A stretch of 64,000 nt of DNA from contig NC_087249.1 in assembly GCF_037042905.1 (NCBI RefSeq), positions 17,546,001 to 17,610,000 of the forward strand. Reading direction: 5' to 3'. A model generated the notes under the pieces. It was not told where the DNA came from and searched no databases. It was given only the letters and a program-made list of their open reading frames with translations. The stretch comes from Lytechinus pictus (taxonomy: Eukaryota). The translations under genes and the position numbers were made by a program. Shown here piece by piece: positions 9,490 through 54,121 of the stretch (its first letter is position 1; each line of letters starts with the position of its first letter).

Positions 9490-9915
9490 TCGAAATCAGA
9501 AATGAATTCTTGATATCAAGAAATGAATTATTGATATCAAGAAATGAATTCTTGATATAAAAAATTGAATTCTTGATATCACGAAATGAATTATTGATAT
9601 CAAGAAATGAATTATTGATATCAAGAAATGAATTATTGATATCAAGAAATGAATTATTGATATCAAGAAATAAATTCTTGATATCAAAAAGTGAATTCTT
9701 GATATTAAGAAATGAATTATTGATATCAAGAAATGAATTATTGATATCAAGAAATGAATTCTTGATATCAAAAAAAGAATTTTTGATATCAAGAATTGAA
9801 TTCTTGATATAAAAAAAATGATTTTATATGTGGTTAATAAATTATCAAGAATTGAATTCTTGATATCAAGAAATGAAGTCTTGATATCAAGAAATCTAAT
9901 TCTGGATATCAGAAA
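9490..9915. repeat. 21-bp minisatellite (GAAATGAATT(C/A)TTGATATCAA)n, probably the subterminal array of a MITE ending at ~9946
   Basis: About 20 units; an inverted unit at 9375-9402; explains ORFs 9496 and 9573. Confidence 0.9.
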
Positions 9916-10964
9916 ATGTGAATAAATGTTCAAACGGCTTGCCATATGCGCGTACCTGTATGCCTCTATCACCACTATCATGACTATGAGCCCCCATAAA
10001 CCCCCATTGCGTGGACCTGTCCTTTGAGAGGTTGAAAGTTATACGAGATGTGAAGAAGTTTTCTTACTGAGACAACCCCCCCCCCAAAAAAAAAAAAAAA
10101 AAAAAAAACAGGAAGTGGTGCACTGGGCGCGCCCCGCTGAATATCGATCGATAACAGCTTGAAAAAGAATGTATAACGAGCTGTCAATAAAAGTACATCA
10201 GGGAAAGGGCTAAATATGTGAACTTAATTAATCTTTCAAATGTAATCCTTCAGTCTTAACGTCACTTCCTAGTGCCCCGAAGCGTGTGGAGGCGAGATCT
10301 CAAAGAAACCAGGAATTCTAGATACTTTGCTTGATCCCTTCCCAATGGAATATTCCTTGCCATGAATTGAAATGGAAACCCGCTCTATTAATAGACCAAA
10401 CAAAATAATTTCTCTCTCCCCCCCCCCCTCCTTTCTACATGTTCTATATCCTTTGTTTTTTTAAATTTCTTTTGTAAAAGTGTCACCATGAAAAGCTCGG
10501 TCGCTTTGCTCCCTCTCTTGAGTTTCTTCGAAAACTTTCACACATCTCATCCCCGCCAGGAAAAGAAATTTCTGCGTTCCGTTATGATTATTGTTGGTAC
10601 ATAAATAGTTCTTTCGGGCACAGTAGGGCAAAAAGAAAATAACCATGATCAGTCGTGTAACATGAGCAAAAAATTAAGAAAGGGAGGCATAATTATATGT
10701 GGCCTTTAAATTCTAAGTCGCAAGAGAGCATTTGTTGTAGATTTTGATCTGATAATCCTCTCTGGTCGTTGTAGTGCCCCCCCCCCCCCCACACACTCAT
10801 ATATGCCCGTATCATGACAAATGATGGAAAAACGTTAGTTCTAATTCTGCTCAGTCTTGATTAAAAACGAGCAGCAATGAAGGCATTGTGTTTTTTCAAT
10901 TACGGGGACTTTTGTTTTTACTATTTTTTTCTTTAAAATACACACTTGCAAACGTTCGTCGAAT

Positions 10965-28645: not shown

Positions 28646-30443
28646 TTCTCTAATTGTGTATGCAAATGGTGTTGATCTGAGATTGAACTCGGAATAATAC
28701 CAATAACACTTGTTCCTGCACTTGCTGTATGTGCGAATAGTACACCATTGAACTCGTATTGATACCAGAGTCATCCGCTTGGTTTTAGATTGACTCAATT
28801 CACACAATAGGGCTTCATATGCACTTCCTGTCATGGTCAATCAACGTATAAGTTCTTTGTATAATGAATCATTAAATAAGCGACGGTTGCTTCATTAAAA
28901 GTTTGTTTTGAAGTGATTAACACGATCAAACTGTATGACTTTAAACGTACTGAATAATCCCCTGTCCATATCAAAACTTCAGAGAGTTTTAATTTTGGTG
29001 GTAAGTGTTTAATGCTTCAAAAATATATGAAGAGACGAGATTTGTCCTCCAATTATGGTCGACAATCATGTTAAACAATATTGACACGACCGCTGAACAC
29101 AATTATATTTCGTATAATGGTAGAAAGCCACTTGACAATAAGTAGGACAGCTTCAGTTGAAATGTCTAAATATCGTTTTCAGCTCACATTTCGCCGTTAT
29201 CCGCAAATAAAGAGATGGGTGTCGAGGTAAGGTCCAAACTTATATTCAGATGAAAACTCTCGACTGATATACCGTTTAGAAAAGTAAAGGTGTTGCAAAG
29301 AGCTTTCTCAGAACTGATTTTCTTTCCAACGTACATAAACGCATATTTCGTTCTCAGCGGGAATAGTTGCCGTTGGTTTAGATAACACGAACTTTTTTTG
29401 CAAACGCGGAAATTAATCATTTAAAAGTTTCACATCAAAACTTCTTTTATCGCGAGATCTCGTGTCTGGGGTGTATTGCAACTTGCGTGGGGCCGTTTAC
29501 TTCGCCAAATGGCACTCCGTTTGAATGTTGAACTTGGTAATACATCATGTGGTTTTCATTAACGGAGACAGATTTCCTCCATATCTTTAGATTACATTTC
29601 AGCCCCCCCCCCTTCCTCTCACTAAACAAGAAAAGTACTGTCAAGATAAAGATATGATGGAAATGATATCCAGTTACAAAAGCAAAAATATCCAAACGAA
29701 CATAAAGCTAATGATTTATGGCAACATAAAATGGATAAAAGAGATGTTAAAGTAAGTCCATGTGAATGCAACCCCTACCCCCAACTTTGCCTATTCCTCA
29801 ACGCGCTCCTGGCCATCCTCTGAAGTGCAGGCGATCACGTGTAAGCCTAATTCAGATTGAAGCGGATACATTAAGAATGCACTGCTGGATCGTGACGACG
29901 AGTCCCCGGTAATAACAAAAAAAAGAGAGAAAGAGGTGGAGAGAAACATACAAAAAGAAAGAGGAAGCAAAGAGAAAGACACAGACACAGAGAGCGAGGT
30001 TGTGTACGTGTGTGTGAGAGAGAGATAGGAGGAAAAGGAAAATTGTCTGATTGAAGAGGGAGAAAGGGAAAGAGAACATGGAGAAAGAGAGAGGGGGAGG
30101 GGAGAACGAAGGATAAAGAGGTAGACACAGGGAGAAGACGTCCTGAAGAGTAAAGCGGTCAACATGAGAGAGAAATGTTGCAAATATAGTCAGGGAGGAA
30201 ATGCGGAAATGAGGCATTCATGTAGGAATTTCCTCGGGCATGGCACCGCAAGCCACGAGTACAACTCTTGGCTTTATTCATCGATATTTGGCCACGATTT
30301 CTTTATTTGTAGTTCATAGAGAAACCGAAGCTATATATCTTACGGAAATTATATGTGGGTCAATGCTCTGCAATGTCGTATGTAATCTCAAAAGACGAAG
30401 AGATACTATCTTTCTTGGCAATACCTTCTTTCCCCCATTCTAA

Positions 30444-30541
30444 GGCTATAGTCACACCAATGAAACCGACTCCAGACCGATCAAATCGAATAGCATATCA
30501 TTTGTCGGTTTGGGGTCGGTTACATTGGTGTGACTGCACTA
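30444..30541. mobile_element. 98-bp hairpin MITE (Harbinger-like)
   Basis: ~31-bp arms AGTCACACCAATG.AACCGAC.CCA.ACCGA; flanks TAA / TTA; a decayed relative lies at ~32278-32365. Confidence 0.6.
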
Positions 30542-31127
30542 TTAGTCAAGCTTGTAACTTCACGCTCCTTTCACCCAGGTGCATGCCCAGGCTACATGCC
30601 AGTTGTGTAGGTTTAATATTCCACTAAAAAAATGATGTTATCAGTGCTCGTGACTCTAAATCAGTCATCGATATCTTGCTAGACGAGCTTGAAGTAAAAA
30701 AAGGAAAAAAGTGAAATTAAAAGTTGAAATGTTGAAGGCTAAACTGATATCGCTACCGTCATCTGTATCTTTATAATTCCTTTACGTCTTTTAAAAGACA
30801 CACAGAGCTAAAATCAATCACATACATTTTTAGAACAACCTTGAGAACAACCCAACAGAACAGATGCCGGTCAGATCCTCAATGAATTGAACTTTTTTCT
30901 ATAACATGTTTTAATAATATTTCCTTTTTTACCAGAAATGTGTCAGCTCTGGCGTAGAATACAATTACTGGTCATTATTGCGTAGTTATAAAGTGATAGA
31001 TGCATGAAATTATAGATATACAAAATAGTTGTTGTTTATGACGATCGAATTCTTTGAATTATATCTACTTCACACAAGTGCTCGTTAATGCCCATTTCAT
31101 CTTGGGCTGCCGCCCGATCGTCATTAA

Positions 31128-31736
31128 AGGTCAAGTCTACCCCAGCAAAATGTTGATTTGAATCAATAGAGAAAAATCAAACTAGCATAACACTGAAAAT
31201 TTCATCAAAATCGTATGTAAAATAAGAAAGTTATGCCATTTTAAAGTTTCGCTTATTTTTCACAAAACAGTGATATGCACAACTTAGTGACATGCAAATG
31301 AGTCAGTCGATGAAGTCCATCACTCACTATTTCTTTTGTTTTTTTATTGTTTGAATTATACAATATTTCATTTTTTACTGATTTGACCATAGGGACCGAC
31401 TTGACTTAATCATAATAGTATTAAACAATGCTAATTCCACATGTTCAGGAATGAATTAATCACTGTTTCACTTGACAATGAGGAGAAAATGAGAATATTT
31501 CATATTTCGTATAACAAAATACAAAAGAAATAGTGAGTGGATGACGTCATCAGTCTCCTCATTTGCATACCAACCAGGATGTGCATAATTATAACTGTTT
31601 TGTGAAATTAAGCCAAATTTTAAAATGTCATAACTTTCTTATTTTACATCCGATTTTGATGAAATTTTCAGTGTTATGCTTGTTGGATTTTTCTCTCTTT
31701 ATTCAAATCAATTTTTTGTTTGGTCGGACTTGTCCT
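31128..31736 (+). mobile_element. Kolobok-like MITE family B
   Basis: TTAA|AGGTCAAGTC ... GACTTGTCCT|TTAA. Confidence 0.87.
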
Positions 31737-33120
31737 TTAACCAAGTAATAACATGAAATTGTAAAGAAATGAATGAATCATTCTACTTCTGGTAAATTTG
31801 TCGGAGGATTATTAATTAGTCTCAAGAGATTTGGGGTATAGTTGTCGGTGATGGTTGTGATAATTCAGATTATAGTGTGTCATATTTCATTTTTATTATC
31901 TGGTCACGTCTGATGCGGAAGACTATGGACAGGAGCTGCAAAGCAGTTACTTCGCATCCACCGTGTATAGTCTTCCGCATCAAATGTTTTGTAGACGTTC
32001 CGAGTAACAGCATCCGACTCGTAAAGGCAAAAACAAAAGCTAAAGCCTCCCCCTAAATATTTTTTTGTCAAATTTGCATGCAAGTTTGCTTTATTTCACT
32101 AACAACGACACAGGGAATCGATGACTGTTGGGATGGCTTGATGACATTTCTTAAGTCGGATCTTAATTTAAAAGCTTTTACATACAATTTTTTTGTAATG
32201 TGTCAAATTGTCAGCAGTTGTGTTGCTGCAAGTTTAAACGCCGTCATTGCCAATATGTCACTTGACTATCCTCGCCAAGTCACACGAAGGAAACCGACTC
32301 CAAACCGACAGATAGTATATCGATGGAAATAACGTAATACCTTTGGCTGGTCTGATATCGGTCGTGCCTGTATGTCTGTGTCATAGCTTATGCTTCATTT
32401 TCTCGAATGTGAGGAAGTAATATAAGCTATATGAATGCATAATCTTGCCAGAAGAAATGACGAGCTATCGATTTTACCCATCAAAGGGAGAAGTATTAAA
32501 GTACATACGGAAGTTGTTAAAGTGACGCACCACCAGGCAGGGGCGGTCCAAGGGGGGGGGGGTGAGGGTGCACGTAGCCTGTAAAATTGTAACCAAAAAA
32601 AGAAAAGAGAGAGAGAGAAAGAAAAGAGAAAAGCCCAAATTCCTTTATTTGTTATTAATGACCTTTTTTTTTAAGTTTAGCTTGTCGAATATTGGGACAA
32701 AATAGACCCCTTTCAGAAGAATTCCCGCCTTATGTCACAGATGGGGGAGTTCCTTCGAATTATCTGAAAAGCAAAGCCAAGTAGACGCCAATGTCCCCAT
32801 AATGGCAAAATGGAGGTGCACTTCTCAAAAAGGGAAATTAAGACAGTAGCAATGTTAAGCAGAAGAGGGGGATTTGCCTACTGCCCCCTGCCCTGCATTC
32901 TAGATACTCTACACCCCGGGAAGTATAGTTTCACTGAATAGTATCTATAGGCCTATTCGGAAGTGAACCTTATGTCAGGTGTTGTGATTTGTGTCACCTC
33001 GGGCATGATTGTTGTTGTTTATCTGATGTACTAAAAATGGAATCCTAAAATAGTTTCCACCATCCACATGGTGGCATGAGGGGGTGCGGAGCAGACTCCC
33101 CCCCCAAAAAAAAAAAAAAA

Positions 33121-33121
33121 A

Positions 33122-33157
<36 letters not shown>

Positions 33158-33179
33158 TAATATAATAATAATAATAATT
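33121..33179. repeat. (AAT)n microsatellite
   Basis: Seen directly. Confidence 0.85.
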
Positions 33180-35206
33180 GTATTATGGCAAGGGTTTGTT
33201 CAACATTGCTGAAATGCAAGCAAAATAAGCGCTGTTTACAATATTTTGTTACAAAAACTTTTATACAAGGGAATAATATTTGTCCCGTTTAAAACGCTTA
33301 TCAATCAGCTCTATCGGTTTGCCACCTTGCAAATATATTCAAGAAAGCCTAATACGGGTCAATATCGATAGCTCACATATTTCATATGTCTATTTTATTC
33401 AAAGTAGCGAAACAAAATGAGGAAAAGGAGTAAAAACGGGCGGGGCCGGGGGGGGGGAGAAAAGTCATGAAACTATTATTCAGTGATCAATTACATTTAT
33501 TGACCTCATGTATTCTAAGCAACTGAAATCGTTGCATCTGCTTGACTCACAGCACAATTACCGATGAAAATAACTATTTGTTTCAGGAAATGCTCCCCTG
33601 GTTTATATTTAATTCCCCCGTTATTTGATTGGAAAAGAAAATACCATGTCAAGGCCCTGGAGCCGAGCCTACCGTCCAACAAGACTGCGCGGTCTAGCAC
33701 TTTAGAATTCAGACAATCATGTTTTAATTCAAATGGACAGGTGCAATTTTTCTAATTCTCTCTAATCATTATTATAGGTAAGATTAATAGAAATATAATA
33801 TTTTGGGAGTGTTTTAAGAATTATACAGAGGTAATCATGGTAATGGTAACAGCCAATTGATAACATTTTTGTGATTGAACAAATTCCTTCTAATTAGGTA
33901 AATTAAACCTATCAACTTTTCATTAGTGCATATACAGCTAAAAATTAAAACGATAAGCACTAACTCAAATATTGCGCCCAACAGCCCCCCCCCCTCTTCT
34001 CCTATCTAACCTTATACTCTACCCCTCTCTAATAAACTACGCCCTCTATAAATGGTGTCATGTGTTTTATGGTGGCTACGGGACAGAAAATAGAGACTTA
34101 CAGTCACGTTCTTAATTCTCATGCCCAAAAATACCGATTTTCATGTACATGTATGTTGGGTGTACTCTGGAGTATATTGGGCGACCACAAAGATCTTGAA
34201 CTTTTCAACATAATTGCAGTATTATCACGGGCGTCTATTTGGGATTGCTCCAATATTGGTCGACATCATTAGGGGAGTAAAATTATGATAATTCCTCAGT
34301 GATAACTGTCGAATAGAGACATCTTTTCATCAGGGGCGGGGCCAAGGTAATTTATATTCTTCTTCTTTCTTTCTTTCTTTCTTTTTTTTAACTTTATCCT
34401 CTTCCTTTTTTGTTTGACCCTTTTCTCCTTAAAAAAATGTTTCCCACTGCTTAAAGGGGGAGTGAACTGTGTGTGGTCTCTCATTGACTGTGTGTAATAG
34501 GTCCATGGTGTAATAAATGCAGTCTTAGAGTATACATTTTCAGACTATTAATTCTACAGAGAATAAATTGACCTATAAGTGTATTTTGTATAGAGAAACT
34601 AAAATGATTTGAGAGGAAAAGTAATTGTTTTGCTACTTGGTAACATAATTATTGCGGCATAAATGTAATTAACATGTTATATTTCAAGTGGGTCTATGTT
34701 ACTAGACTACACTAGCATTATGGGTCAGGACACTGGCCAGGTATGAGTAGTTGAGGACTCGAGATGGCGCTATTGGTTCGTATCTGCTAGTGTTCCTGTA
34801 TAGAATACGCATGCGCATGTGACAAACAGCAGTTTGCTGCTATTTTAAAGATTGATTTCTATAGGCCTACACTCTAAAATTCAAGGGGTTAGTTAGGGGT
34901 TAAAAACTAGATTCATGACATTGTAAACAGATAATACAGATTGTCGATTAAGACACGCACACACAAGGTAACTATGGAACGGTTCTGACACATGGACTGT
35001 TTCAAATGTAATTTCTCTCAAGCTCGATTAAAATGTTATAAGAGAGTGACGTCAATTCTTGTTATTTCTTAAACTAACCTCACTAATCACTTTTTAATCC
35101 ACATCACCATTTTCAATCATCAACACCAATGCTACCTGTATCACGATGGAAGAAAGCACTAATTACAGTATACCTAAAAGCTATTGAATAACATTAATAA
35201 AACTAT

Positions 35207-36910
35207 TTATGAGCTTCTCTTATCAAAAGATTTTCCTCCTAACAACGACTCCGATTTCCCAGAAGTACCCATGAAGCTTATTATGTTGTGGAGAGTGTCT
35301 TTCTCAGTAACTGAAGTTAAATCAATAGTCTTTTTCATTCCTAAATCTCTTTGCTCTAGTTACTCAACGATTCTCCAGTGATCAGTTATTCTGATCCTTC
35401 ACACAGTGAGATCAGCAGGCCTCTTGACGTTACTGAGGCAGTTGAGATGGGCTAATTTGTCTCTCATTAAAGTTCCAATAAGTGTCTCAGGCCAGTTCAA
35501 TGATGGAATGGCTCCCTAACAATAAATTATTCTGGTCTTTCGGTGGGTAAAATTACTCTATTAAAGCAACTGAGGAACTGTCCTTAGTACCTTCATCATT
35601 ATGTTTAGAATAGTAGAAGGAGGACCGAGAAGTGGTTTACCAGAAATCAAGCGACTAATCTCATCAAGGATTGGGTTGCTAGGCCATGCATGCTCTTATG
35701 GATTGATTCGGACTTTGTAAAACAACTGAGGCAGTTCAGACTGTCCTCAGTTACTTCTAAGTCTACATTCTAATTGGGATACAGCTTATTCATCCTTCTA
35801 TCTAGCTCTTCCAGAGATGGATTAAGAAGTGATTCTCCTGCAATCAAGCGATCAATCTCATCAAGGGTTGGGTTGCTAGGCCATTCAGGACTCTCACAGA
35901 ATGATTTGGATTTCCTGAAACAACTGAGGCAGTTCAGACTGTCCTTCTCAGTTGCTTCTAAGTCCACACTCCAATTGGGGTACAGCTTCTTCATCTTCTA
36001 TCTAGCTCCTCCAGAGATGGATTAAGAAGTGATTCTCCTGCAATCAAGCGATCAATCTAATCGAGGGTTGGGTTGCTGGGTCATTCGGGACTCTCACAGA
36101 ATGATTCAGATTTCCTGCAAAAACTGAGGCAGTTTAGACTGTCCTTCTCAGTTGCTTCTAAGTCCACTCTCCAATTGGGGTACAGCTTCTTCATCCTTCT
36201 ATCTAGCTCCTCCAGAGATGGATTAAGAAGTGATTCTCCTGCAATCAAGCGATCAATCTCATCAAGGGTTGGGTTGCTGGGCCATTCAGGACTCTCACAG
36301 AATGATTTGGATTTCCTGAAACAACTGAGGCAGTTTAGACTGTCCTCAGTTGTGTCTAAGTCCACACTCCAATTCGGGTACAGCTTCTTCATTCTTCTAT
36401 CTAGCTCCTCCAGAGATGGATTAAGAAGTGATTCTCCTGCAATCAAGCGATCAATCTCATCAAGGGTTGGGTTGCTAGGCCATTCAGGGCCTTTCGACAG
36501 TTATTCTGATGTCATTCCATGGCAGCGCGACTTTCTGAAAAATGCCAAGCAGCTTCCAAACAATGATCGGGATCGCTTGCTCTGTTCCTCATCGTCTTCC
36601 CAGTAATCCGGAATAACCATATCCGGGTACAACTTTATCATCCTGAGGTCAAGTTCCATATCTTCCCAAGATGTCTTCACATCTCCTGACTCATTTGGTT
36701 GGTATGATTTCCGGAAACACTTGAAGATACCCTTTGCACGTTTCATCATTGAGCGGAGAGTGGCCCATGCCTTCCCCCCTTACGGACGCCACCGGAATTG
36801 AACTGCTCAATGCTGCGGTCGACGATTTCCTGGAAGTACTCTTCAGGTAGAAGGTCTAAATCTGTCACAGAAGACGAAAGCGCAGGATCGACTTTTCTTT
36901 CTGCTCTCAT
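35207..36910 (-). pseudogene. Disabled intronless ORF of an unrecognised tandem-repeat protein
   Basis: AAAGATG start at 36910. Frame continues through a G6-run frameshift (36774-36779), stops at 36501, 36081, 36058 and 35770, and a 1-bp deletion near 35995. Diverged repeat copies continue to TAA near 35207. Confidence 0.6.
35640..36490 (-). repeat. Tandem repeat, about 4.3 units of 197-201 bp (WPSNPTLDEIDRLIAGESLLNPSLEELDRRMKKLYPNWSVDLEATEKDSLNCLSCFRKSKSFCESPE)
   Basis: Register marker CATTC/CATGC at 35685, 35882, 36082, 36283 and 36481; units are near-identical. Confidence 0.95.
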
Positions 36911-38074
36911 CTTTAGAATTAGTTCAAAACAGCTAAACATAACTGAATATGAAAGTTCAATATTGCTGAAAAAAATCAGACAAAGCTTGCTTCGAGAGGA
37001 CTCGGGACACAAACTGAGATTTACAAACAAACGCACAAAGATAACGTTTGACCGGGTGACGTAAACAATGACCGCGCATAATATCATACGCATGCGCGTA
37101 GAGTAATCAGCCATCATACCTGAGTTGCAATCAATCGCTACTTGATTTTCTAATTTTTCTACCAATCAACTGCGCGCATTTGGGACTTGCGATTGACTTT
37201 TTTTTATTTGCGTATAAACGCAACTCTTTCTGCAACGGACCCCTGTTTATGTATTGAGAAAAAAGGAATAATTTTTTAGAATGGATATTATGGAAGCATC
37301 CCGGGGGGGGGGGGGGCACTTCCATTGACGAGTGGATACCATGCGCGACCAAGGGGTCTCGAAAAGCACCCTAAACACGTATTTTCCATATACTGAAAAT
37401 GCACTCTTTAATAAGTATTGGCGTGTGAAACCCTACCCTTAACAAGTACTGGAAACAAACCGATACTATTGGCAAGTATTCCCTGAATTGAACTCCTAAA
37501 GAAGTACAGCGATATTTCAATTGTTATGTCACGGACGTCGGTCGTCGGTACCTACATCAGTGGGTTTAGTACAGCCCCACCTCCCACACTTCGCGCAAAT
37601 CGTACTCTAAACACGTAGTGTTGACTCTTGGGGCATCATCCAATAGAACACCCAAAAAAAAAATCCTCATCGAAAGCTACCCCCCCCCCCCCCACCAAAA
37701 AAAAGGCTTGCGAATTACAGAACGCAAAATACTTAGTAAATCTGTTTTTATTCAAAACTCTGGTTGATGATAAAAGATATATTTTACAAATATTTTTTAG
37801 CTTTCATGCCCTTACGTTAATCTGTTGTTCTAGGTACAATATCAATAAACTACATTTATCAAAACCACCAGTTTTTCTCATTTTTTTTTTCATGGAAGTT
37901 GGATCCGAATTTTGAAAACTTATAGGGCCATACGATACAGAGATCCACTCCCACGTCACATTATAATAAGTTATCAAAAGTTACGAAAATTATTGCATCT
38001 GATTAACTCTGAAAAAAAAAATCAGTCCGTGAAAATCACAGGCTATTTGCTTGATGAAACATACCTATGTTTGG

Positions 38075-38332
38075 CAGGGGCGGAACCAGTATATTCCAAG
38101 GGGGTGGGGTTAGTACAGGAAAAATTTGACAAGCAAAAAAAAAAAGTTTTCACTACAAAATGGTCACTTTGTTCCAGGAAATTTTATAGGAAAAAAAGAT
38201 TTAAAAGCAAAAAAGAGCCTCACTTGCATATGCATGACATATTCCCCCCTAAAAAAAAAAAACTTTATTTGTGCCTCTCAAAAAAAGGGGGGGGGGGCAG
38301 GCTGGATGTACCCATACCTGGATCCGCCACTG
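38075..38332. mobile_element. hAT-like MITE (CAGGGGCGGA / GGATCCGCCACTG ends)
   Basis: Same termini as the 20953 element; degenerate 8-bp TSD ATGTTTGG / ATGTGTGA. Confidence 0.65.
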
Positions 38333-38764
38333 ATGTGTGATATGAGACCGTCTCAGACCAAACACTGATAGCAAGACTCACAAAAATTATTAACACAAAC
38401 ACACATTCTTTTATATCATTCATAATGTATTTCATTATCAAATCACAATATATCAATATAAAATCTATCCCATGAAGCATTTTATGCATACAAAATACGA
38501 TAAAAGTGTTACGACTGGCCTGTCACACAATGTTGTCCAATATTGTTTGTAAATTCCTATATGGTTTGATCCTAGTTTGTCTAATAACCATTTGGTCTAA
38601 TTATAATTTAGCCCATTTACCATTTCGTATAAGATCCACTTGGTCTAACATCACTAATTTAGTCTAAACGGCGAAGTGCTTATGAAACAAACTATCACCT
38701 AGTAAGAAAGTTCCAAATAAAAGTGCATGAAGAGAAAAATGGACCATCTGGAGATTAGAACAAA

Positions 38765-39030
38765 TGAGCGTTTTGGCAGAGTGGTCTCCTGACCTTAAAA
38801 CGGAGGGCCGAGGGTTCAAATCCTAATCAAGGTGTAATTTTCTTCAGCACAAAATGTATCCACACTGTGCTGTACTTAACCCAGGTGAGGTTAATGGGTG
38901 CTTGGTAGGATCAATTTTTCTAATGCACCGAGCAACGCTGATAAAGGTGTAGCTTGAGCTGAAGCCCGGGTAATAATAGTTTTTGTATCCTCTGGCAAAA
39001 AGTGCTATGTAAATCCAGATATCATTATTA
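38765..39030 (+). mobile_element. tRNA-derived SINE, same head and core as the 62116 copy but a different tail
   Basis: TGGCAGAGTGG and GGTTCAAATCC boxes; shared core; ends AAAAGTGCTATGTAAATCCAG..ATTATTA. Confidence 0.78.
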
Positions 39031-39206
39031 ATGACAAATTCTTTAGACTAAATGGGTATTAGACCAAGTGAAGTTAAGACCAAACAACAATTAGACCAAA
39101 TTGATACTAGACCTACTGGTACTTTGGTCTTATTGTGTAGACCAAGTGGGTTAAGCCCATGTGTCTTTGGACTATCTGAGAAGCAGACTAATTTCTTGTA
39201 GACCAA

Positions 39207-39597
39207 GGCCGGTATCCGATACTTAAGCCAGGATTTTAAGTGTTTCGCTCAGAATTTTGCTTAAGTAAAATACTTGACCATCTTTTGGTATTCAATTGCA
39301 TTTGTGGCTAAGTATTCTGCTTAAATCTAAGTCAGCCACCTACCTGGCTTAAATTTTGCATGCAGTTTACAAACGTGATACGCACAGTCGTACATTCGGC
39401 AAACAGATAAATACAAACATTGCGCACCATTTGGCTCAAACTTAACGACGTCACAATGGCTATTAGTAAGTATTTTGCTAAAATTTTGCTTGATATAGTA
39501 AAATGCTTGGATGTGATCTGAATACGAGCTTAAGCATTTCAAGTAAAATGCTAAGTAAAATGCTTACAAAATCAATGCTTTTGATTGAATACCAGCC
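39207..39597. mobile_element. PIF/Harbinger-like MITE
   Basis: TIR GGC(C/T)GGTAT(C/T)C; 3-bp TSD CAA; internal CTTAAG/GCTAAGTA repeats. Confidence 0.7.
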
Positions 39598-39829
39598 CAA
39601 CTTCTGCCCAAGTGATTAGAAACCAAACAAAGGTATGCACTGGTTTCTCAGATGGTTTCTATGGAAGGCAGAGTTTGACTATGGTGTGACAGGGGCCTTA
39701 TGAAATCCATAAAAGTAAAATTGGCCACGACACATAGTATTCTCAAAGAAATCAGTAATTGGTCATTACAGGGGGATCCAACCTTGGTACGAAAAAAATA
39801 AAACATGTACTTATTTGCCACATCACAAA

Positions 39830-40460
39830 CATGACAGGGTGCCTCATTTTTCTCTCTCTGAAAAGGAGTGATCATGTTCACTCTTGACACGTTTTTAAGA
39901 GTGAACATGAACTTTTAGCTGGAGGGAATTGCAAGTACAGGGTGACTCAATATTACTCTTTCTAAAAAGAAATGACAATTTTCTTTCTTAACCCTTTTCA
40001 GGACACAATTTATGGTATAAAAAAATACTGTAGTTAATAAAAACTTCAGTGACTCTTGGCTGGATAGAGATGCCAATACAGGGTGCCTCAATGTTACCCT
40101 CTCTATCTCTGAAAAGGACTGATCATGTTCACTCTTAAACGTGTTTCTGAACCCAATTTATGATAATTACTCAACATTGTAGTTCATCAAATCTAGCCTC
40201 AATGAACAAGCTCAAAGACTTTTAACTGGAGGAAATGGCCAGGAGAGGGTGTCTCAATTTTACTGACTCTAAAAAGGAAATTCTGGACCCAATTTATGGC
40301 AGCTAATATTCATCCATAACTGGCATCAGTGAAATGACCTCTGGCCCCCAGGCTTCTGGCTGGATGGAATCGCCTCAATTTCTAAATTTTTGTCTCATTT
40401 TTTTAAAGGTGTAAACATGCTCACTCTATTTTTAATTCTAAATGAATTTCTCTAGAGTGG
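39830..40460. repeat. Degenerate tandem repeat (ACAGGGTGCCTCA...TCTGAAAAGGA.TGATCATGTTCACTCT)
   Basis: Motif recurs at ~39834, 39937, 40078, 40285 and 40373. Confidence 0.6.
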
Positions 40461-41437
40461 CAGTGTTTATATCATTATTATATCAGTTATTCGAAGAGCA
40501 TTGGGAAGGATCACTCAAAGAAGGATTGAAATTTCAATCTACATTCACTCCAAAGTCTCTCTAATTTGTATCCTTAAAAGTGACAGTGTCATTTTTCCCA
40601 TATCTTTTTGTTTTAATACATTAACAAATACATACATGTACAATCATGGGTATTAAGGCCACAAATAGAGTTGGAATCCTTACAAACAGTCAAACTAATT
40701 TGTAATAATAACAATGCTTTGTCACTGTGTTGCCCCTATGAATAATCATAGTACATTAATGGTGCATTACTAATCAAGTCTCTTTTATTACATCTTTATT
40801 TAATCAATGGATGTTCTCAAAAGATAGCTCAACACTTTAAATATTTTTTTTTTTCCATCCATATGTACAGTACATGTTTTCCGAGAAATATATGAATAAA
40901 TCATTCCTGAGAACCAAATTTGTCTTGACATAAATCCTTAACCATCAAGATTGAAAATGGCATGATTTTACTGAAAATTATAAATTTTTATTCAATAGAG
41001 ATTTGTAGCTATTACAAATGCTTTTAATGTCTCACACACCAAAAAAAAATAATTTCTATCTTGTTCAATGAGAACACAGTTTTCAAAGACAGTCTTGGTC
41101 AACCTAATAAATCGGAATAAACTATATGCTGTAATTATAGAAATGGTCCACTTGATACTTCTTCTTTTTTTTAAACAAAATTAATGGACATCTTCAAGAT
41201 CAAGCATTCAACCATTTTCTCCAATACACTCTAAATTGCAATATTCATGCTTGAAACCACAATACATTCTTTGTCGATTAAACATCAATTACAAATATAT
41301 TATTATAAACCACATTTACATTTATATTTCAAAATTCCTTTAATACACAAGGACCACATTTACAATGTATCTGGGGTCTGCTGCAAAAAGTGTTGTCTTC
41401 AAACACAATTTAAAAAAAAATCAGTCACAAGTTCTCA

Positions 41438-42186
41438 ATTCTCGCTACCCCAAATACATGTAGGAACAAAAATCTCATAATGCGCGAGACAAGATAATTT
41501 TCTCTCCGTCGGGTCGTCATCACCACTTCCGGTTCAAAGTAATGCTCGCGCGAGGTTCGCGATACTGAGTTTCCACCACGCTGAAATCGATGCCAATCAG
41601 CGTAATATGTACAGATTATAATACTTTTTATTTAATTTTGTTCAGTTTTGATTCCATTTGAATTATAAATAAAAATGAAAAATATATTTCACGTGAAAAT
41701 AATTTTTATTCATGTTTTTATCTGGTTATAAAAAAGTCCAAAAAATGAATATCTTACAATATTTTGCATTTAGCGACCGGCCTGACATCACGATCGTATT
41801 TGACTAGACGCTAAATATAAACAGCATTCATTCCGTTCAATTTTTCGTCGACCACAAAATGGATAAAAAAATCAGTTTTGGAACTTAAAAAAATCTTAAC
41901 TGACAGAGGAATACCGTGCAATGGAAAGCGTCGGGCAGAATTAGTGACTTTAGCAGAAAAGGCCGTTAAACTGTATCGTGAAAGAGAGGGTTGTGATCAC
42001 GAACTTTCCGAGCGAAAGCGACGTTGTGTTGTTGTGCATGACGGCACTGTTGATCTGAATGGCAAAACAGTGCATTGGACTTCCGAACAGGAAGTTGTAA
42101 TACCGAAAAGCTATCCCATAATGCAATGCACGTTACAGGGATTTGTCCCGGATCTCGGCGAAATCGCTATTTGGGGTAGCGAGAAT
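41438..42186 (+). mobile_element. 749-bp TIR element carrying the N-terminus of a SAP-like domain ORF
   Basis: Perfect 19-bp TIR ATTCTCGCTACCCCAAATA. ORF from ATG 41859 (one extra A in an A run) reads MDKKSVLELKKILTDRGIPCNGKRRAELVTLA. Confidence 0.72.
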
Positions 42187-49370: not shown

Positions 49371-52292
49371 TAGTCTGGTCTGTTAGCGGAATTATGTGGA
49401 CACGGTGGACAAAAGCATGATTTTTTCTCCAGACCTTTGTTTATGTATGAGAATTAAAAATGGGGTATGCTCCAAAAAATCTGGCTGCAGGAACAGTGAA
49501 AAAATGGGTGAAAATGTCAGAATTTATGAGTTTAGATTGGTCTGATATATAGACTAGCGCTAGTGCAAAACTCAATTGCAGTGCATTATTTTGCATTGGT
49601 TTAGTTCTTGAATTCAGACCCTTTTTGAACAGATATTCTGTTTGTCCTCATCTCAATGCACTAAATATCTGAATGCAGATGCTAAACAAGCCGAAGGGTG
49701 GCGGTGGAGGGGGTTGAATGTTGGTGTGTATGTACATATTTTGGTCTTGGGGTAAAGATGTGCAAGACACATTTTTTTGCATGTGTTGGAAATTGTGTTG
49801 CCATGGTAACAGTGTATTATGGCAAAAATAAGGTACAAATCTTGCAGTTAGAACTATACTCCCTCTGTTGTCACCCGATTCTCATGAAATTTGGCACACA
49901 CATTGGTCTTGAGGTGAAGATGTCTAAGACACATTTTGTGTGTCTTTCAAAAATCTTGTTACCATGGTAACAACATATTATTTGGTGAAAATTGGGGAAA
50001 AAATTACAATTCAAACTGCTTCATCAGTTTTAAATCAATTCTCATGAAATTTGACACACACATTGGTATTAGAGTAAAGATGTACAAGGCACTTTCTGTA
50101 TGTGTTTCATAAATTGTGTTGCCATGGTAACAACATATTATATGGCAAAATTTAGGTAAAAACCTTGCAATTTGAACAACTTCATCAGTTTTGAACCATT
50201 TCTCATGAAATTTGGCTCATACATTTGCTTTGAGGTAAAGATGTGCAAGAACCATTTTATGTGTGCATTTGTCAGAGTATATTGCCATGGTAACCACATA
50301 TGATAGCCAGAAATGCAGGAAAACTCATTGTGGATCAAACAACTTCCCCTTTTTTTAGTCAGTGCTCATAAAAGTTGGAAGAAATATTCATCTTTGGGTA
50401 AAGATTCATATTAAATTCTAAACTGCATTAAAACATATGAGTGTGGGGGTATTAATCACCTTCAGTAATATTTATAGGTTTTGGGGGAGGAGCGGGATTG
50501 GTCCTTAAAATCTGACCTCAAAATAAAGGTTAAAGGCGGTGTCCATTAACACTCTTGAAATAAGCATCCCCTCAAGGGCATAGGCTGGGGGGTACACTGA
50601 GTGAATGTGAAACCTTCCGCTCTGGCAAAGGAGTTCCAACACTGGCAAGCAAAACAAAATGTGTACCCCTTCTACTTTCAACGGCTGATTTTCCAAACCT
50701 TAGTTCCACCTTCCCAAGATGTGCACCCCTCCCCATACCACTTCTATCTCCCTATGCTCAATCAGTCTACGCCTTTGCCCCTCAGGGGTCTTTGTATTTT
50801 AAAGCGAGACATTACTCCCTTTTTTTTTTTGGGGGGGGGGTCTTTAGAAAATTACCTCATAAAAGTAAAAGTTAAAGGATTATGACTAAGAACTTAACCC
50901 CCCCCCCCCCGCAAACAAATGGGGCTGATATATTTTTTGAGCAGAAAAATGCCCCCCCCCCCCCCATTAAAAGGTAAGAAGATTCATTTGCACTTCAGAG
51001 TTCAGACCATTCATTTGATGTTTAATGCATTCTGCTTTGGTAAAAAATTGTTTACAGTAGCCAATTAATCATTGTTTATTTATATTCTCATACTCAGTCT
51101 TTTATTCATATTCCATTCCTACTCTTTCTCTTTAACTATATCACATCACTCTTGATTTTGAGCTTCACCATACCATCTTATGTTTCCTCTCTCCTTTTTT
51201 TACCCTCTCTTCTCTCCAAGTATATTTTTTCTGACATATTATAAAGTGAACCTTTAATCATGCAACTAATTATAGAAATATATATATGTATATACAAAAA
51301 TCTCTGCACTTGTTTTAGAAATTCACTTGCAAATCCATGACTCAATAGCATACCATATCAAAAATATGCATATGTGCACAATAATTTTTTGCCTTCAATT
51401 TTATTTCATTTAATTTTTTCAGTATAATTGTCAAAAAATGAATATTATGTTTCAGTAGCAAAATTGTTGGATGCAAGATCTGACTGTCACAAAAAATGCA
51501 AATAATTTTGCATTGGAGTAAGGACGAACGTATTCACTGTTCATTGAGCAAATGATGACTTTTATTTCTCGACATATATTCTAGTCATATCCCTTTCAGA
51601 TGGTGGTAACTGCAGGAATGGGAAAACTCAGTGATATAACTAAAATTTTCACAGAGGATTTTCGGAAAACAACTAAATCCATTTTTTTTCAAGCAACAGT
51701 TATTCCATTCTGAATGCTGCAACTATGAATTTGATGCACCTTTACCGAAATATAATATCATGACAGCCATTTCTTCAATTCTTTAAACTAGACATTAAAT
51801 ATAGCTAATAGTATTATTTAGGACAGAGTGTAGCCAAAATAGAGTTTAGAAGATTATGAAGAAATTAATAAATGTCATGGTATTATATTTCAGTGTAGGT
51901 GTAAGCATTCAAAATGGAATAATTGTTGCTAGATAATAATGAATTAAAATAGCAAAAAAAAATGTACTTAGAGAGGGAGAAAAAGAGGGGGGGGGAACAA
52001 AACAAGAAGGTATGGTAAAGCTCTAAAGTGCAAAAAGTGATGTAAGAAAGTCAGAGTAAACACTGAAATGAACAAAGACTGAGTAGAAGGAGATAAATAA
52101 AACTTTGATTAATTGGGCACCGGAAATGATCTTTTATCAAACCAGAATGTTTTAGGCTTTAAATTAATACGCTGAAGTGTAAAGGATTTTTCTTCCCCCC
52201 TTTTTTTTTTTTTGGGGGGGGGGTCAGTTCCTAGTTGTAATTATTTCCTTTTACTCTTTATGTGGCAATTTTCTAAAGGCCCCCCCCCCCCC

Positions 52293-52324
<32 letters not shown>

Positions 52325-54121
52325 AAGGGGTGCTTTCTTTAAGAGTGTTTAAGTTCCTAATGGCCATGTCCTTTAACCTTCTATATGTTTATGTTGTCAG
52401 TTTTTAAGGACCTCCTCCGCCCCCCCCCAAAAAAAAGAACCTATAAATATTATTGAAGGTGATTAATACCATGAATACCCTGCGCTATTTTATGATGTTA
52501 AAGGGGAATCCAAACCAAATAAACACTTGTTTTTATGAGGAAAAGAAAAAATCAGACAATAGGTCAAAGTTTGAACAATATCGGACAAACCATAATAAAG
52601 TTGTGAATATATAAAAGTTGTAAACATTGGTAATCACTATATACCCATGAAGACTTCAAATTGGCCGCACATGTGATGTCATAATGATGTAAGGGAAGGA
52701 CCACTCTTCCATGTACAGAAATAATTAATTGACTAAAATGTCTTTTTCAAAAGTTTTACTTCAAATTGTATCTTTCTTTCATGAGGACATAAAGCATTAT
52801 ACTAACAGGTTTATATTACGGCCCCAATGAAATTTAGGAGAAAACCAAAAATCAAAGTACAAGGCCAATGGGAAAGTTGTCCTTGCGGCCTCACCCCTTG
52901 TCATAATTTACTTACCCATTATCAATTTGAAATCTACATACTAGTAGCCTTAGGGATCTTAATTTTAAAGCAGCCATAACTTTATTTTGCTTGTCCGATT
53001 GCTTTCAAACTTTCACCATTCTTATTTTTCTCCTTTTCCACACAACATTTTATGACCAAGGCTGGATTCCCCTTTAACACTGAATGTGAATCTTTACCCA
53101 AAATGAATATTTGTGTAAACTTTTCTGAGTAGATTGATCCACAATTGATGAGTTTTCCCTGCATTTCTGGCTATATGTGGTTATGAAGGCAATGCACTCT
53201 CTGACAAATGAAAAAAAAAAGGTTCTTGCACACCTTTATCTCAAGGCCAATGTGTGAGCCATATCATGCATGAGAATTGGTTTGAAACTGATGAAGTAGT
53301 TCAAATTGCAAGGTTTTTACCTAAATTTTGCCATATAATATGTTGTTACCATGGCAACACAATTTCTGAAACAATCACAAAAAGTGCATGCCTTGTACAT
53401 CTTTACTTTAATACCAATGTGTGTGCCAAATTTCATGAGAATTGATTTAAAACTGATGAAGCAGTTTGAATTGTAAGGTTTTTTCCCCAATTTTCACCAA
53501 ATGTTATGTTGTTACCATGGCAACAAAATTTCCGAAAGACACACAAAATGTGTCTTAGACATCTTCACCTCAAGACCAATGTGTGTGCCAAATTTCATGA
53601 GAATCGGATGAAAACAGAGGAAGTAGTTCTAACTGCAAGATTTGTAACCTTATTTTGCCATAATACACTGTTACCATGGCAACACAATTTCCAACACATG
53701 CAAAAAAATGTGTCTTGCACATCTTTACACCAAGACCAAAATATGTACATACACACCAACATTCAACCCCCTCCACCGCCACCCTTCGGCTTGTTTAGCA
53801 TCTGCATTCAGATATTTAGTGCATTGAGATGTGAGGACAAACAGAATATCTGTTCAAAAAGGGTCTGAATTCAAGAACTAAACCAATGCAAAATAATGCA
53901 CTGCTATTGAGTTTTACACTAGCGCTAGTCTATATATCAGACCAATCTAAACTCATAAATTCTGACATTTTCACCCATTTTTTCTATGTTCCTGCAGCCA
54001 GATTTTTTGGAGCATACCCCATTTTTAATTCTTATACATAAACAAAGGTCTGGAGAGAAAATCATGCTTTTGTCCACTGTGTCCACAAGTAGGGTGTTTT
54101 TGACGCTAACAGACCGGACTA
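49371..54121. mobile_element. 4.75-kb foldback non-autonomous DNA transposon with ~1.85-kb inverted arms (Academ-like termini)
   Basis: Ends TAGTC(T/C)GGTCTGTTAGCG ... CGCTAACAGACCGGACTA with a 3-bp TSD ATA. Arms span 49371-~51235 and ~51950-54121; the right arm also contains the family C MITE. Confidence 0.85.
52502..53073. mobile_element. Kolobok-like MITE family C, inserted in the right arm of the foldback
   Basis: TTAA|AGGGGAATCCA ... TGGATTCCCCT|TTAA; no counterpart in the left arm. Confidence 0.85.

What the first reader, a model, noticed from the sequence alone, without database searches (positions are those of the whole stretch)
35207..36910. Unrecognised tandem-repeat protein gene, recently expanded and then disabled
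Seen: a Kozak-like ATG followed by a reading frame built from one motif at different ages. Diverged N-terminal units (KCFRKS, ELDLRMIKLYP, CLAFFRKS) are followed by four near-identical 66-67-aa units, then decayed C-terminal units (LEQRDLGMKK...TEKDTL). The 198/201-bp unit difference is one whole codon, consistent with coding history. Each unit has two acidic amphipathic helices (PTLDEIDRLI, PSLEELDRRM) and a CLSCFRKS motif resembling a palmitoylation or membrane anchor. Most stops are private to single units, so they post-date the expansion. I do not recognise the family; it may be an orphan gene family or transposon cargo.
Basis: partly seen in the sequence, partly recalled or inferred. Interest (0 to 1): 0.72.

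Follow-up and report, generated by a model that had tools for sequence, protein, structure and literature searches.

The report
Dead copy of urchin repeat-protein gene
This stretch is a broken duplicate of a sea-urchin-only, intron-free gene for a protein built of 66-67-residue repeats. An intact 743-codon copy lies 145 kb away, so the family is real but this copy is an ordinary pseudogene.

Summary
A unique N-terminal region is followed by four near-identical units of 198, 201, 200 and 197 bp, then by decayed units. The copy carries seven or more disabling lesions, each private to one unit.

Two corrections:
- The copied block runs on to 37118 and includes about 180 bp of promoter-like sequence.

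The genome holds only one other copy. It lies about 145 kb away on the same chromosome in inverted orientation. It is one open frame of 743 codons with ten units, all of 198 or 201 bp.

Against contigs from a related species, dN/dS is 0.20-0.32 (p = 2e-10), with most differences at third codon positions. This refutes the non-coding satellite reading.

Homology between the two copies stops at the gene's edges, and no terminal repeats bound it. Transposon cargo is therefore unsupported. A 240-bp tract is 98.8% identical to the intact gene, against 78-87% next to it, which points to recent gene conversion.

The protein has no informative relative. A Pfam DinI hit and a diatom RING-repeat resemblance were both rejected. 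Its function is unknown; a cytosolic helical-repeat scaffold is my guess.

The scan holds no follow-up on this family elsewhere.

The parts
36941..37118 (-). Duplicated upstream block, read as promoter plus 5' UTR. It holds an NRF1/P3A2-like CGCGCATGCG at 37098-37089, CATTGTTTACGTCA with a CRE-like half-site at 37070-37057, and a 51-bp block at 37022-36972 that is identical to the paralogue and contains an initiator-like CTCAGTTTG.
   Evidence: Homology to the intact paralogue starts at 37118. The same block is conserved in contigs of another species, where homology starts about 22 bp further in. The promoter function is inferred, not shown.
36489..36940 (-). Unique N-terminal coding region of the pseudogene, with the conserved ATG at 36940-36938. 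It is broken by a +2 change at the G6 run 36779-36774, giving TGA at 36748-36746, and by TAA at 36503-36501 where the paralogue has TCA. It contains one ancient diverged unit.
   Evidence: Against the paralogue, dN/dS is about 0.9-1.2, from only 23 differences.
36525..36764 (-). Tract that is 98.8% (237/240) identical to the intact paralogue, flanked by sequence at 78-87% identity. Read as a recent gene-conversion tract.
   Evidence: Identity profile in 60-bp steps. Synonymous divergence is 0.02 here against 0.125 further upstream. Conversion is inferred from this pattern.
36291..36488 (-). Repeat unit 1, 198 bp, frame intact. It is 96% identical to unit 3 of the paralogue.
36090..36290 (-). 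Repeat unit 2, 201 bp, frame intact.
35890..36089 (-). Repeat unit 3, 200 bp. Broken by TGA at 36083-36081, TAG at 36059-36057 and a 1-base deletion between 35995 and 35994.
35693..35889 (-). Repeat unit 4, 197 bp, more diverged at 89% identity. Broken by TAG at 35772-35770 and by 1 base missing at its 3' end.
35480..35692 (-). Decayed unit 5. It shares the ISGKPLL variant with the decayed last unit of the paralogue, so it was present before the two copies separated.
   Evidence: Identity to the paralogue's tail is only about 60-70%.
35207..35479 (-). Older decayed tail with a recognisable unit remnant (LEQRDLGMKK...TEKDTL). It has no convincing DNA match in the paralogue's tail.

Best explanation
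Window 35207-37118 (minus strand) is a non-processed, duplicated pseudogene. Its parent family is a lineage-restricted, intron-free sea-urchin gene. The working copy lies about 145 kb away in inverted orientation, at G000:C5:17726619-17728850. It encodes a 743-residue, 87-kDa, acidic, hydrophilic protein without a signal peptide or membrane span. That protein has a 150-residue unique head followed by ten units of 66-67 residues.

Shown:
- The duplication carried only the gene and about 180 bp of upstream sequence.
- After the copies separated, both arrays changed their unit numbers. Most units of the intact array (4-10) share changes found in no window unit, and some are 97.5-100% identical to each other.
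- The window copy then gained at least seven frame-breaking lesions.

Inferred:
- A 240-bp piece of the window copy was recently overwritten from the intact gene by gene conversion.
- The window copy now makes no full-length protein. At most it serves as a partner for conversion and unequal exchange.
- The protein is probably a cytosolic, largely helical or partly disordered multivalent scaffold. Each unit offers the same short motifs: an acidic dileucine-like EIDRLI, a PSLEELD helix, and a cysteine next to a basic FRKSKS patch. Unit number is adjustable by unequal crossing-over. I hold this functional guess at about 0.2.
For: - Only two loci exist in the 812-Mb assembly. This holds for a protein search, a DNA search and a search with the unique head alone.
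- The paralogue is one 743-codon frame. All ten of its units are 198 or 201 bp long.
- The window copy is 88.8% identical to it over 1,491 bp. It carries a +2 change, two 1-base deletions and four nonsense changes.
- Protein-level constraint across species: against contig L023, dN/dS is 0.32 for residues 1-84 and 0.20 for residues 91-175. Pooled pS is 0.50 against pN 0.18, Fisher p = 1.8e-10. Differences by codon position are 36, 23 and 66, p = 9e-6.
- Among units, variable columns by codon position are 14, 16 and 29, p = 0.03.
- The upstream block is conserved between the two copies and across species.
- Flanks are unrelated beyond 37118 and beyond about 35480.
- Conversion tract: 237/240 identical against 78-87% next to it.
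- Protein properties: pI 5.0, GRAVY -0.77, no hydrophobic span. The structure model shows helices only.
- A Bindin gene in the assembly fits an echinoid genome.
Against:
- The intact copy itself ends at a TAA inside unit 9, with one further in-frame unit behind it. It may be mildly truncated.
- Several of its units are 97.5-100% identical. Part of its long open frame is therefore inherited from recent unit copying rather than kept open by selection.
- Every related contig from the other species (L023-L026) also carries frameshifts. No intact copy has been seen outside this genome.
- dN/dS between the window copy and the paralogue rests on only 23 differences.
- The structure model is unreliable, with pLDDT 37.
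Confidence: 0.85

Rival explanations
1. Neither copy encodes a protein. The units form a local minisatellite whose unit happens to lack stops in one frame, so amplification created a long accidental open frame.
For: Recently copied units (some 97.5-100% identical) extend an open frame without selection. Among paralogue units alone the codon-position bias is not significant: 10, 11 and 18, p = 0.23. No expression data are available. Copies in the related species are frameshifted.
Against: - The non-repeated 150-codon head is open too. It shows dN/dS of 0.20-0.32 with a strong third-position excess across species, p = 2e-10.
- All unit-length differences in the intact copy are whole codons.
- About 5% of random substitutions in the unit would create a stop. 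The diverged units 1-6 nonetheless have none.
- The window copy, at similar divergence, has seven lesions.
Confidence: 0.06
2. The gene is cargo of, or itself part of, a mobile element that copied it to a second site.
For: The copied block is compact, about 1.6 kb plus repeats, with sharp homology edges. The 5' edge lies within about 22 bp of where cross-species homology starts. High-copy SINE- or MITE-like elements lie close by, at 37303-37696 and 34451-34788.
Against: There are only two copies in 812 Mb. No inverted or direct terminal repeats bound the block. No transposase, reverse transcriptase or poly(A) tail is present. The nearby repeats are separate elements that are absent at the paralogue's edges.
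Confidence: 0.04
3. The window copy is still used, either as a short N-terminal peptide (64 codons up to the TGA at 36748) or as a regulatory or antisense RNA acting on the intact gene.
For: It keeps the conserved promoter-like block, including a 51-bp stretch identical to the paralogue. The first 52 codons are open.
Against: Over those codons, dN/dS against the paralogue is about 0.9. The upstream block is only 70-78% identical outside the 51-bp core. There is no transcript evidence.
Confidence: 0.05

Closest known systems
Duplicated (non-processed) pseudogenes that exchange sequence with a functional paralogue by gene conversion
   Same: It copies the gene plus upstream non-coding sequence. 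It carries multiple frame-breaking lesions and shows relaxed constraint. One tract of near identity to the working copy sits inside older divergence.
   Different: The parent is an uncharacterised, intron-free tandem-repeat gene. Both arrays also changed unit number after the duplication.
SpTransformer (Sp185/333) genes of sea urchins (PMC5103432, PMC5491942; abstracts seen)
   Same: Both are small echinoid-restricted genes whose coding sequence is built of repeats, and both diversify quickly. Only the abstracts were read, so the comparison goes no further than that.
   Different: No sequence similarity was found in the exhaustive protein search. This gene has no leader peptide and one open frame, against two exons in SpTransformer. 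Its units are acidic and Cys/Lys-containing. There are two loci rather than a cluster of about 50.
Diatom RING-finger proteins with repeats of the GDRSHPNL..LD....SYPGW type (uncharacterised; for example Seminavis and Thalassiosira 'hypothetical protein')
   Same: A motif of about 30 residues, P.L..LD, then YP.W..D and A.E, aligns with the units of this genome. hhalign gives probability 89%, and a profile of the diatom repeats scores 10-21 bits against at most 5.9 for shuffled units.
   Different: This protein has no RING domain. The older forms of the unit (the ancient unit in the N-terminal region and the units of the related species) carry six or seven extra residues between YP and W and score 2.6 bits or less. 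The resemblance therefore arose late, by chance or convergence. The organisms are also very distant.

Membership tests
Duplicated non-processed pseudogene | Homology to a functional paralogue that extends into non-coding flank | tested here: met
   88.8% identity over 1,491 bp, including about 180 bp upstream of the ATG.
Duplicated non-processed pseudogene | Frame-breaking lesions that are absent from the paralogue | tested here: met
   One +2 change, two 1-base deletions and four nonsense codons. The paralogue is open over 743 codons.
Duplicated non-processed pseudogene | Not expressed as a full-length protein | not testable with these tools
Processed pseudogene (retrocopy) | Lacks the parent's promoter, ends in poly(A), and is flanked by target-site duplications | tested here: not met
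   The upstream block was copied. There is no poly(A) at the 3' edge and no flanking repeats. Loss of introns is uninformative because the parent has none.
Satellite or minisatellite DNA | Non-coding arrays without codon-position bias, usually at many loci | tested here: not met
   Two loci only. There is a third-position excess and dN/dS of 0.2-0.3 across species.
Transposable element cargo | Terminal repeats or target-site duplications, multiple dispersed copies, and element-encoded enzymes | tested here: not met
DinI-like family (Pfam PF06183) | A domain-level match across the 63-position model | tested here: not met
   The whole-protein score of 100.6 bits is a sum over repeats. No single stretch passes, and the best covers only model positions 10-38. 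DinI is also a bacterial SOS protein, from established knowledge.
Diatom RING repeat proteins | C-terminal C3HC4 RING domain, and a repeat motif present in the ancestral units | tested here: not met
   Pfam finds no RING domain in this protein, though it does in the diatom proteins. Ancestral-type units do not match the diatom repeat profile.
SpTransformer / Sp185-333 | Sequence similarity, leader peptide, two-exon structure | tested here: not met
   No such hit among 1.84 billion representatives. There is no hydrophobic leader and the gene is a single open frame.

The most novel reading that the evidence does not exclude
The intact paralogue defines a previously undescribed, echinoid-restricted protein family that evolves by gene birth-and-death and by rapid change of unit number. 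Independent duplicates exist in a second species. The family could serve a fast-evolving role such as reproduction or defence, with the pseudogene acting as a reservoir for gene conversion.
Probability: 0.15. Interest if true: 0.5.

Novelty: new member of a known kind. Interest (0 to 1): 0.27.

Why it matters
For genome annotation, the window locus should be marked as a pseudogene, and the locus at C5:17726619-17728850 as the likely working gene. The pair gives a small, clean example of three processes in a genetic model urchin: unit-number change in a coding repeat, decay of a duplicate, and gene conversion between inverted copies 145 kb apart. The protein family has no described relatives, so its role is open. 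Nothing here bears on a long-standing question.

Tried and rejected
- **Family and structure libraries.** Pfam, NCBIfam, PDB sequence and ESM Atlas searches gave nothing real. The DinI hit is an artefact of summing over repeats.
- **Word-indexed search with the 743-residue protein.** No hit.
- **Exhaustive search of representatives.** It returned two short true relatives, a set of diatom RING proteins, and one unrelated repetitive protein (P0002). I followed the diatom resemblance through and rejected it as convergence.
- **Paper searches.** Searches for the run accessions and for similar urchin genes found nothing on this family.
- **Structure prediction.** AlphaFold2 from a single sequence gave pLDDT 37. 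That is too poor for a fold search, so none was run. I did not use the second fold job, because the available alignment would be shallow and nearly identical.
- **Rfam over 30000-42000.** No match.
- **Wider segmental duplication.** Rejected, because the flanks do not match.

Full report
**What is there.** Read on the minus strand, window 36940-35207 has three parts.
- A unique region of about 150 codons comes first.
- Tandem units follow, beginning at 36488, 36290, 36089, 35889 and 35692. Their lengths are 198, 201, 200 and 197 bp.
- The array then fades into a decayed fifth unit and an older remnant.

Tandem Repeats Finder reports period 200, 4.2 copies and 91% matches. Units 1-3 are about 95% identical to each other. 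Unit 4 is 89% identical to them.

**An intact paralogue exists.** Protein and DNA searches of the window's own 812-Mb assembly find exactly one other locus. A search with the unique head alone finds the same two loci. The second locus is on the same chromosome, about 145 kb away and in inverted orientation. There, L020:6619-8850 (G000:C5:17726619-17728850) is a single open frame of 743 codons. It holds the same head and ten full units, every one of them 198 or 201 bp long. The frame ends at a TAA inside unit 9. One more in-frame unit and a decayed unit with a 17-bp deletion follow it.

**The window copy is broken.** Aligned with the paralogue, it shows these lesions:
- a +2 change at the G6 run 36779-36774, which leads to TGA at 36748-36746;
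- TAA at 36503-36501, where the paralogue has TCA;
- TGA at 36083-36081 and TAG at 36059-36057 in unit 3;
- a 1-base deletion between 35995 and 35994;
- TAG at 35772-35770 in unit 4;
- one base missing at the end of unit 4.

Each lesion is private to one unit or to the head, so they came after the units were copied. The start codon shared by both copies and by another species is at 36940, not 36910.

**It is, or was, protein-coding.** The exhaustive search of 1.84 billion representative proteins returned only two true relatives. They are short ORFs from Logan assemblies of runs SRR28370573, SRR28370583 and SRR28370587. Their contigs (L023-L026) are about 70-72% identical in DNA to the paralogue.

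Against L023:
- dN/dS is 0.32 over residues 1-84 and 0.20 over residues 91-175.
- Pooled pS is 0.50 against pN 0.18 (Fisher p = 1.8e-10).
- Differences at codon positions 1, 2 and 3 number 36, 23 and 66 (p = 9e-6).

Among all 14 full units of the two copies in this genome, variable columns number 14, 16 and 29 by codon position (p = 0.03). Pairwise dN/dS among the paralogue's ten units is mostly 0.2-0.8. Between the window copy and the paralogue, dN/dS is about 0.9-1.2. That fits one unconstrained lineage, although it rests on only 23 differences.

One caution applies. All four related-species contigs also carry frameshifts. No intact copy has yet been seen outside this genome.

**Extent and mode of the duplication.** Homology between the two loci runs from 37118 to about 35480, and the flanks are unrelated. 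The upstream 180 bp is shared. It contains:
- CGCGCATGCG at 37098-37089;
- CATTGTTTACGTCA at 37070-37057;
- a 51-bp block at 37022-36972 that is identical in the paralogue and well conserved in the other species.

I read this block as promoter plus 5' UTR, which is an inference. No terminal inverted or direct repeats bound the block, and no poly(A) ends it. That argues against a transposon and against a retrocopy.

**Gene conversion.** Identity to the paralogue is 78-87% from 37118 to 36765. It then jumps to 237/240 from 36764 to 36525. Synonymous divergence there is 0.02, against 0.125 upstream. Gene conversion from the intact copy is the simplest account.

**History of the units.** Window units 1-3 group with paralogue unit 3. 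Paralogue units 4-10 share later changes such as NQT and YEN, and include units that are 97.5-100% identical. Both arrays therefore changed unit number after the duplication.

**The protein.** It is 87 kDa, with pI 5.0 and GRAVY -0.77. It has no signal peptide and no hydrophobic span. AlphaFold2 on residues 1-350 gives only helices, at pLDDT 37. This is weak support for three helices per unit and says nothing about a fold.

Each unit carries three motifs:
- an EIDRLI string that fits the acidic-dileucine pattern;
- a PSLEELD helix;
- a CLSCFRKSKS patch.

Two of the three cysteines are replaced by tyrosine in paralogue units 4-9. That weakens a metal-binding or disulphide role. One cysteine next to a basic patch remains. 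My functional guess is a cytosolic multivalent scaffold that may be S-acylated. It is inference only.

**Comparison with known families.**
- Pfam's DinI score is a sum over repeats with no passing domain.
- The other hits are diatom RING proteins with a GDRSHPNL..LD....SYPGW repeat. hhalign gives 89% probability over 36 columns. A profile of the diatom repeat scores this genome's derived units at 10-21 bits, against at most 5.9 for shuffles. It scores the ancient unit in the head and the related species' units at 2.6 bits or less. Those older units have extra residues between YP and W. The likeness arose late and is not homology.
- SpTransformer genes of urchins are a loose analogue in their mode of evolution only.

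**Organism.** Earlier notes of this scan call the genome a sea urchin, Lytechinus pictus. I checked only that the assembly holds a Bindin gene, at 237 bits and with no match in the control genomes. That fits an echinoid. The species name is untested here.

**Limits.** Expression, strand and the raw-read check of the lesions are therefore open, and read laying was not used. Absence of annotated orthologues there is weak evidence.

**Verdict.** The window holds an ordinary duplicated pseudogene of a real but undescribed lineage-restricted repeat-protein gene. Interest is modest.

Noticed in passing
window 37303-37696: An element of about 335-390 bp bounded by G14 and C14 inverted runs. The first look found thousands of candidate copies in the genome, and those scored are about 90% identical. 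It sits 185 bp upstream of the pseudogene's copied block. It looks like a young MITE or SINE.
   Followed up: partly
window 34451-34788: A second high-copy repeat family of about 338 bp, at about 85% identity. The first look found thousands of candidates.
   Followed up: no
window 49741-50264 and 53240-53739: Two arrays with a period of about 160 bp and about 3 copies each. Their consensus units look like reverse complements of one another, lying about 3 kb apart. This could be a foldback-type or other inverted-repeat element.
   Followed up: no
window 9498-9915: A 21-bp tandem repeat of about 20 copies, overlapping a 161-codon minus-strand ORF at 9496-9981.
   Followed up: no
L023, L024, L025, L026 (Logan contigs of SRR28370573, SRR28370583, SRR28370587): A related species holds at least three loci of the same family, and all carry frameshifts. 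Two of them differ by dS of only 0.04. Their units keep six or seven residues between YP and W that this genome's expanded units have lost.
   Followed up: partly
P0003, P0005-P0008 and P0011-P0126 (diatom proteins): A large diatom family (188 hits) of proteins of about 430 residues. They have 50-60-residue repeats of the GDRSHPNL..LD....SYPGW type and a C-terminal C3HC4 RING domain. The repeat has no Pfam model, and the sources name the proteins only as hypothetical.
   Followed up: partly
L020:8848-8850: The intact paralogue's frame ends at a TAA inside unit 9, where other units have TCA. A further in-frame unit lies behind it. The working protein may be a recent truncation of a longer one.
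   Followed up: partly
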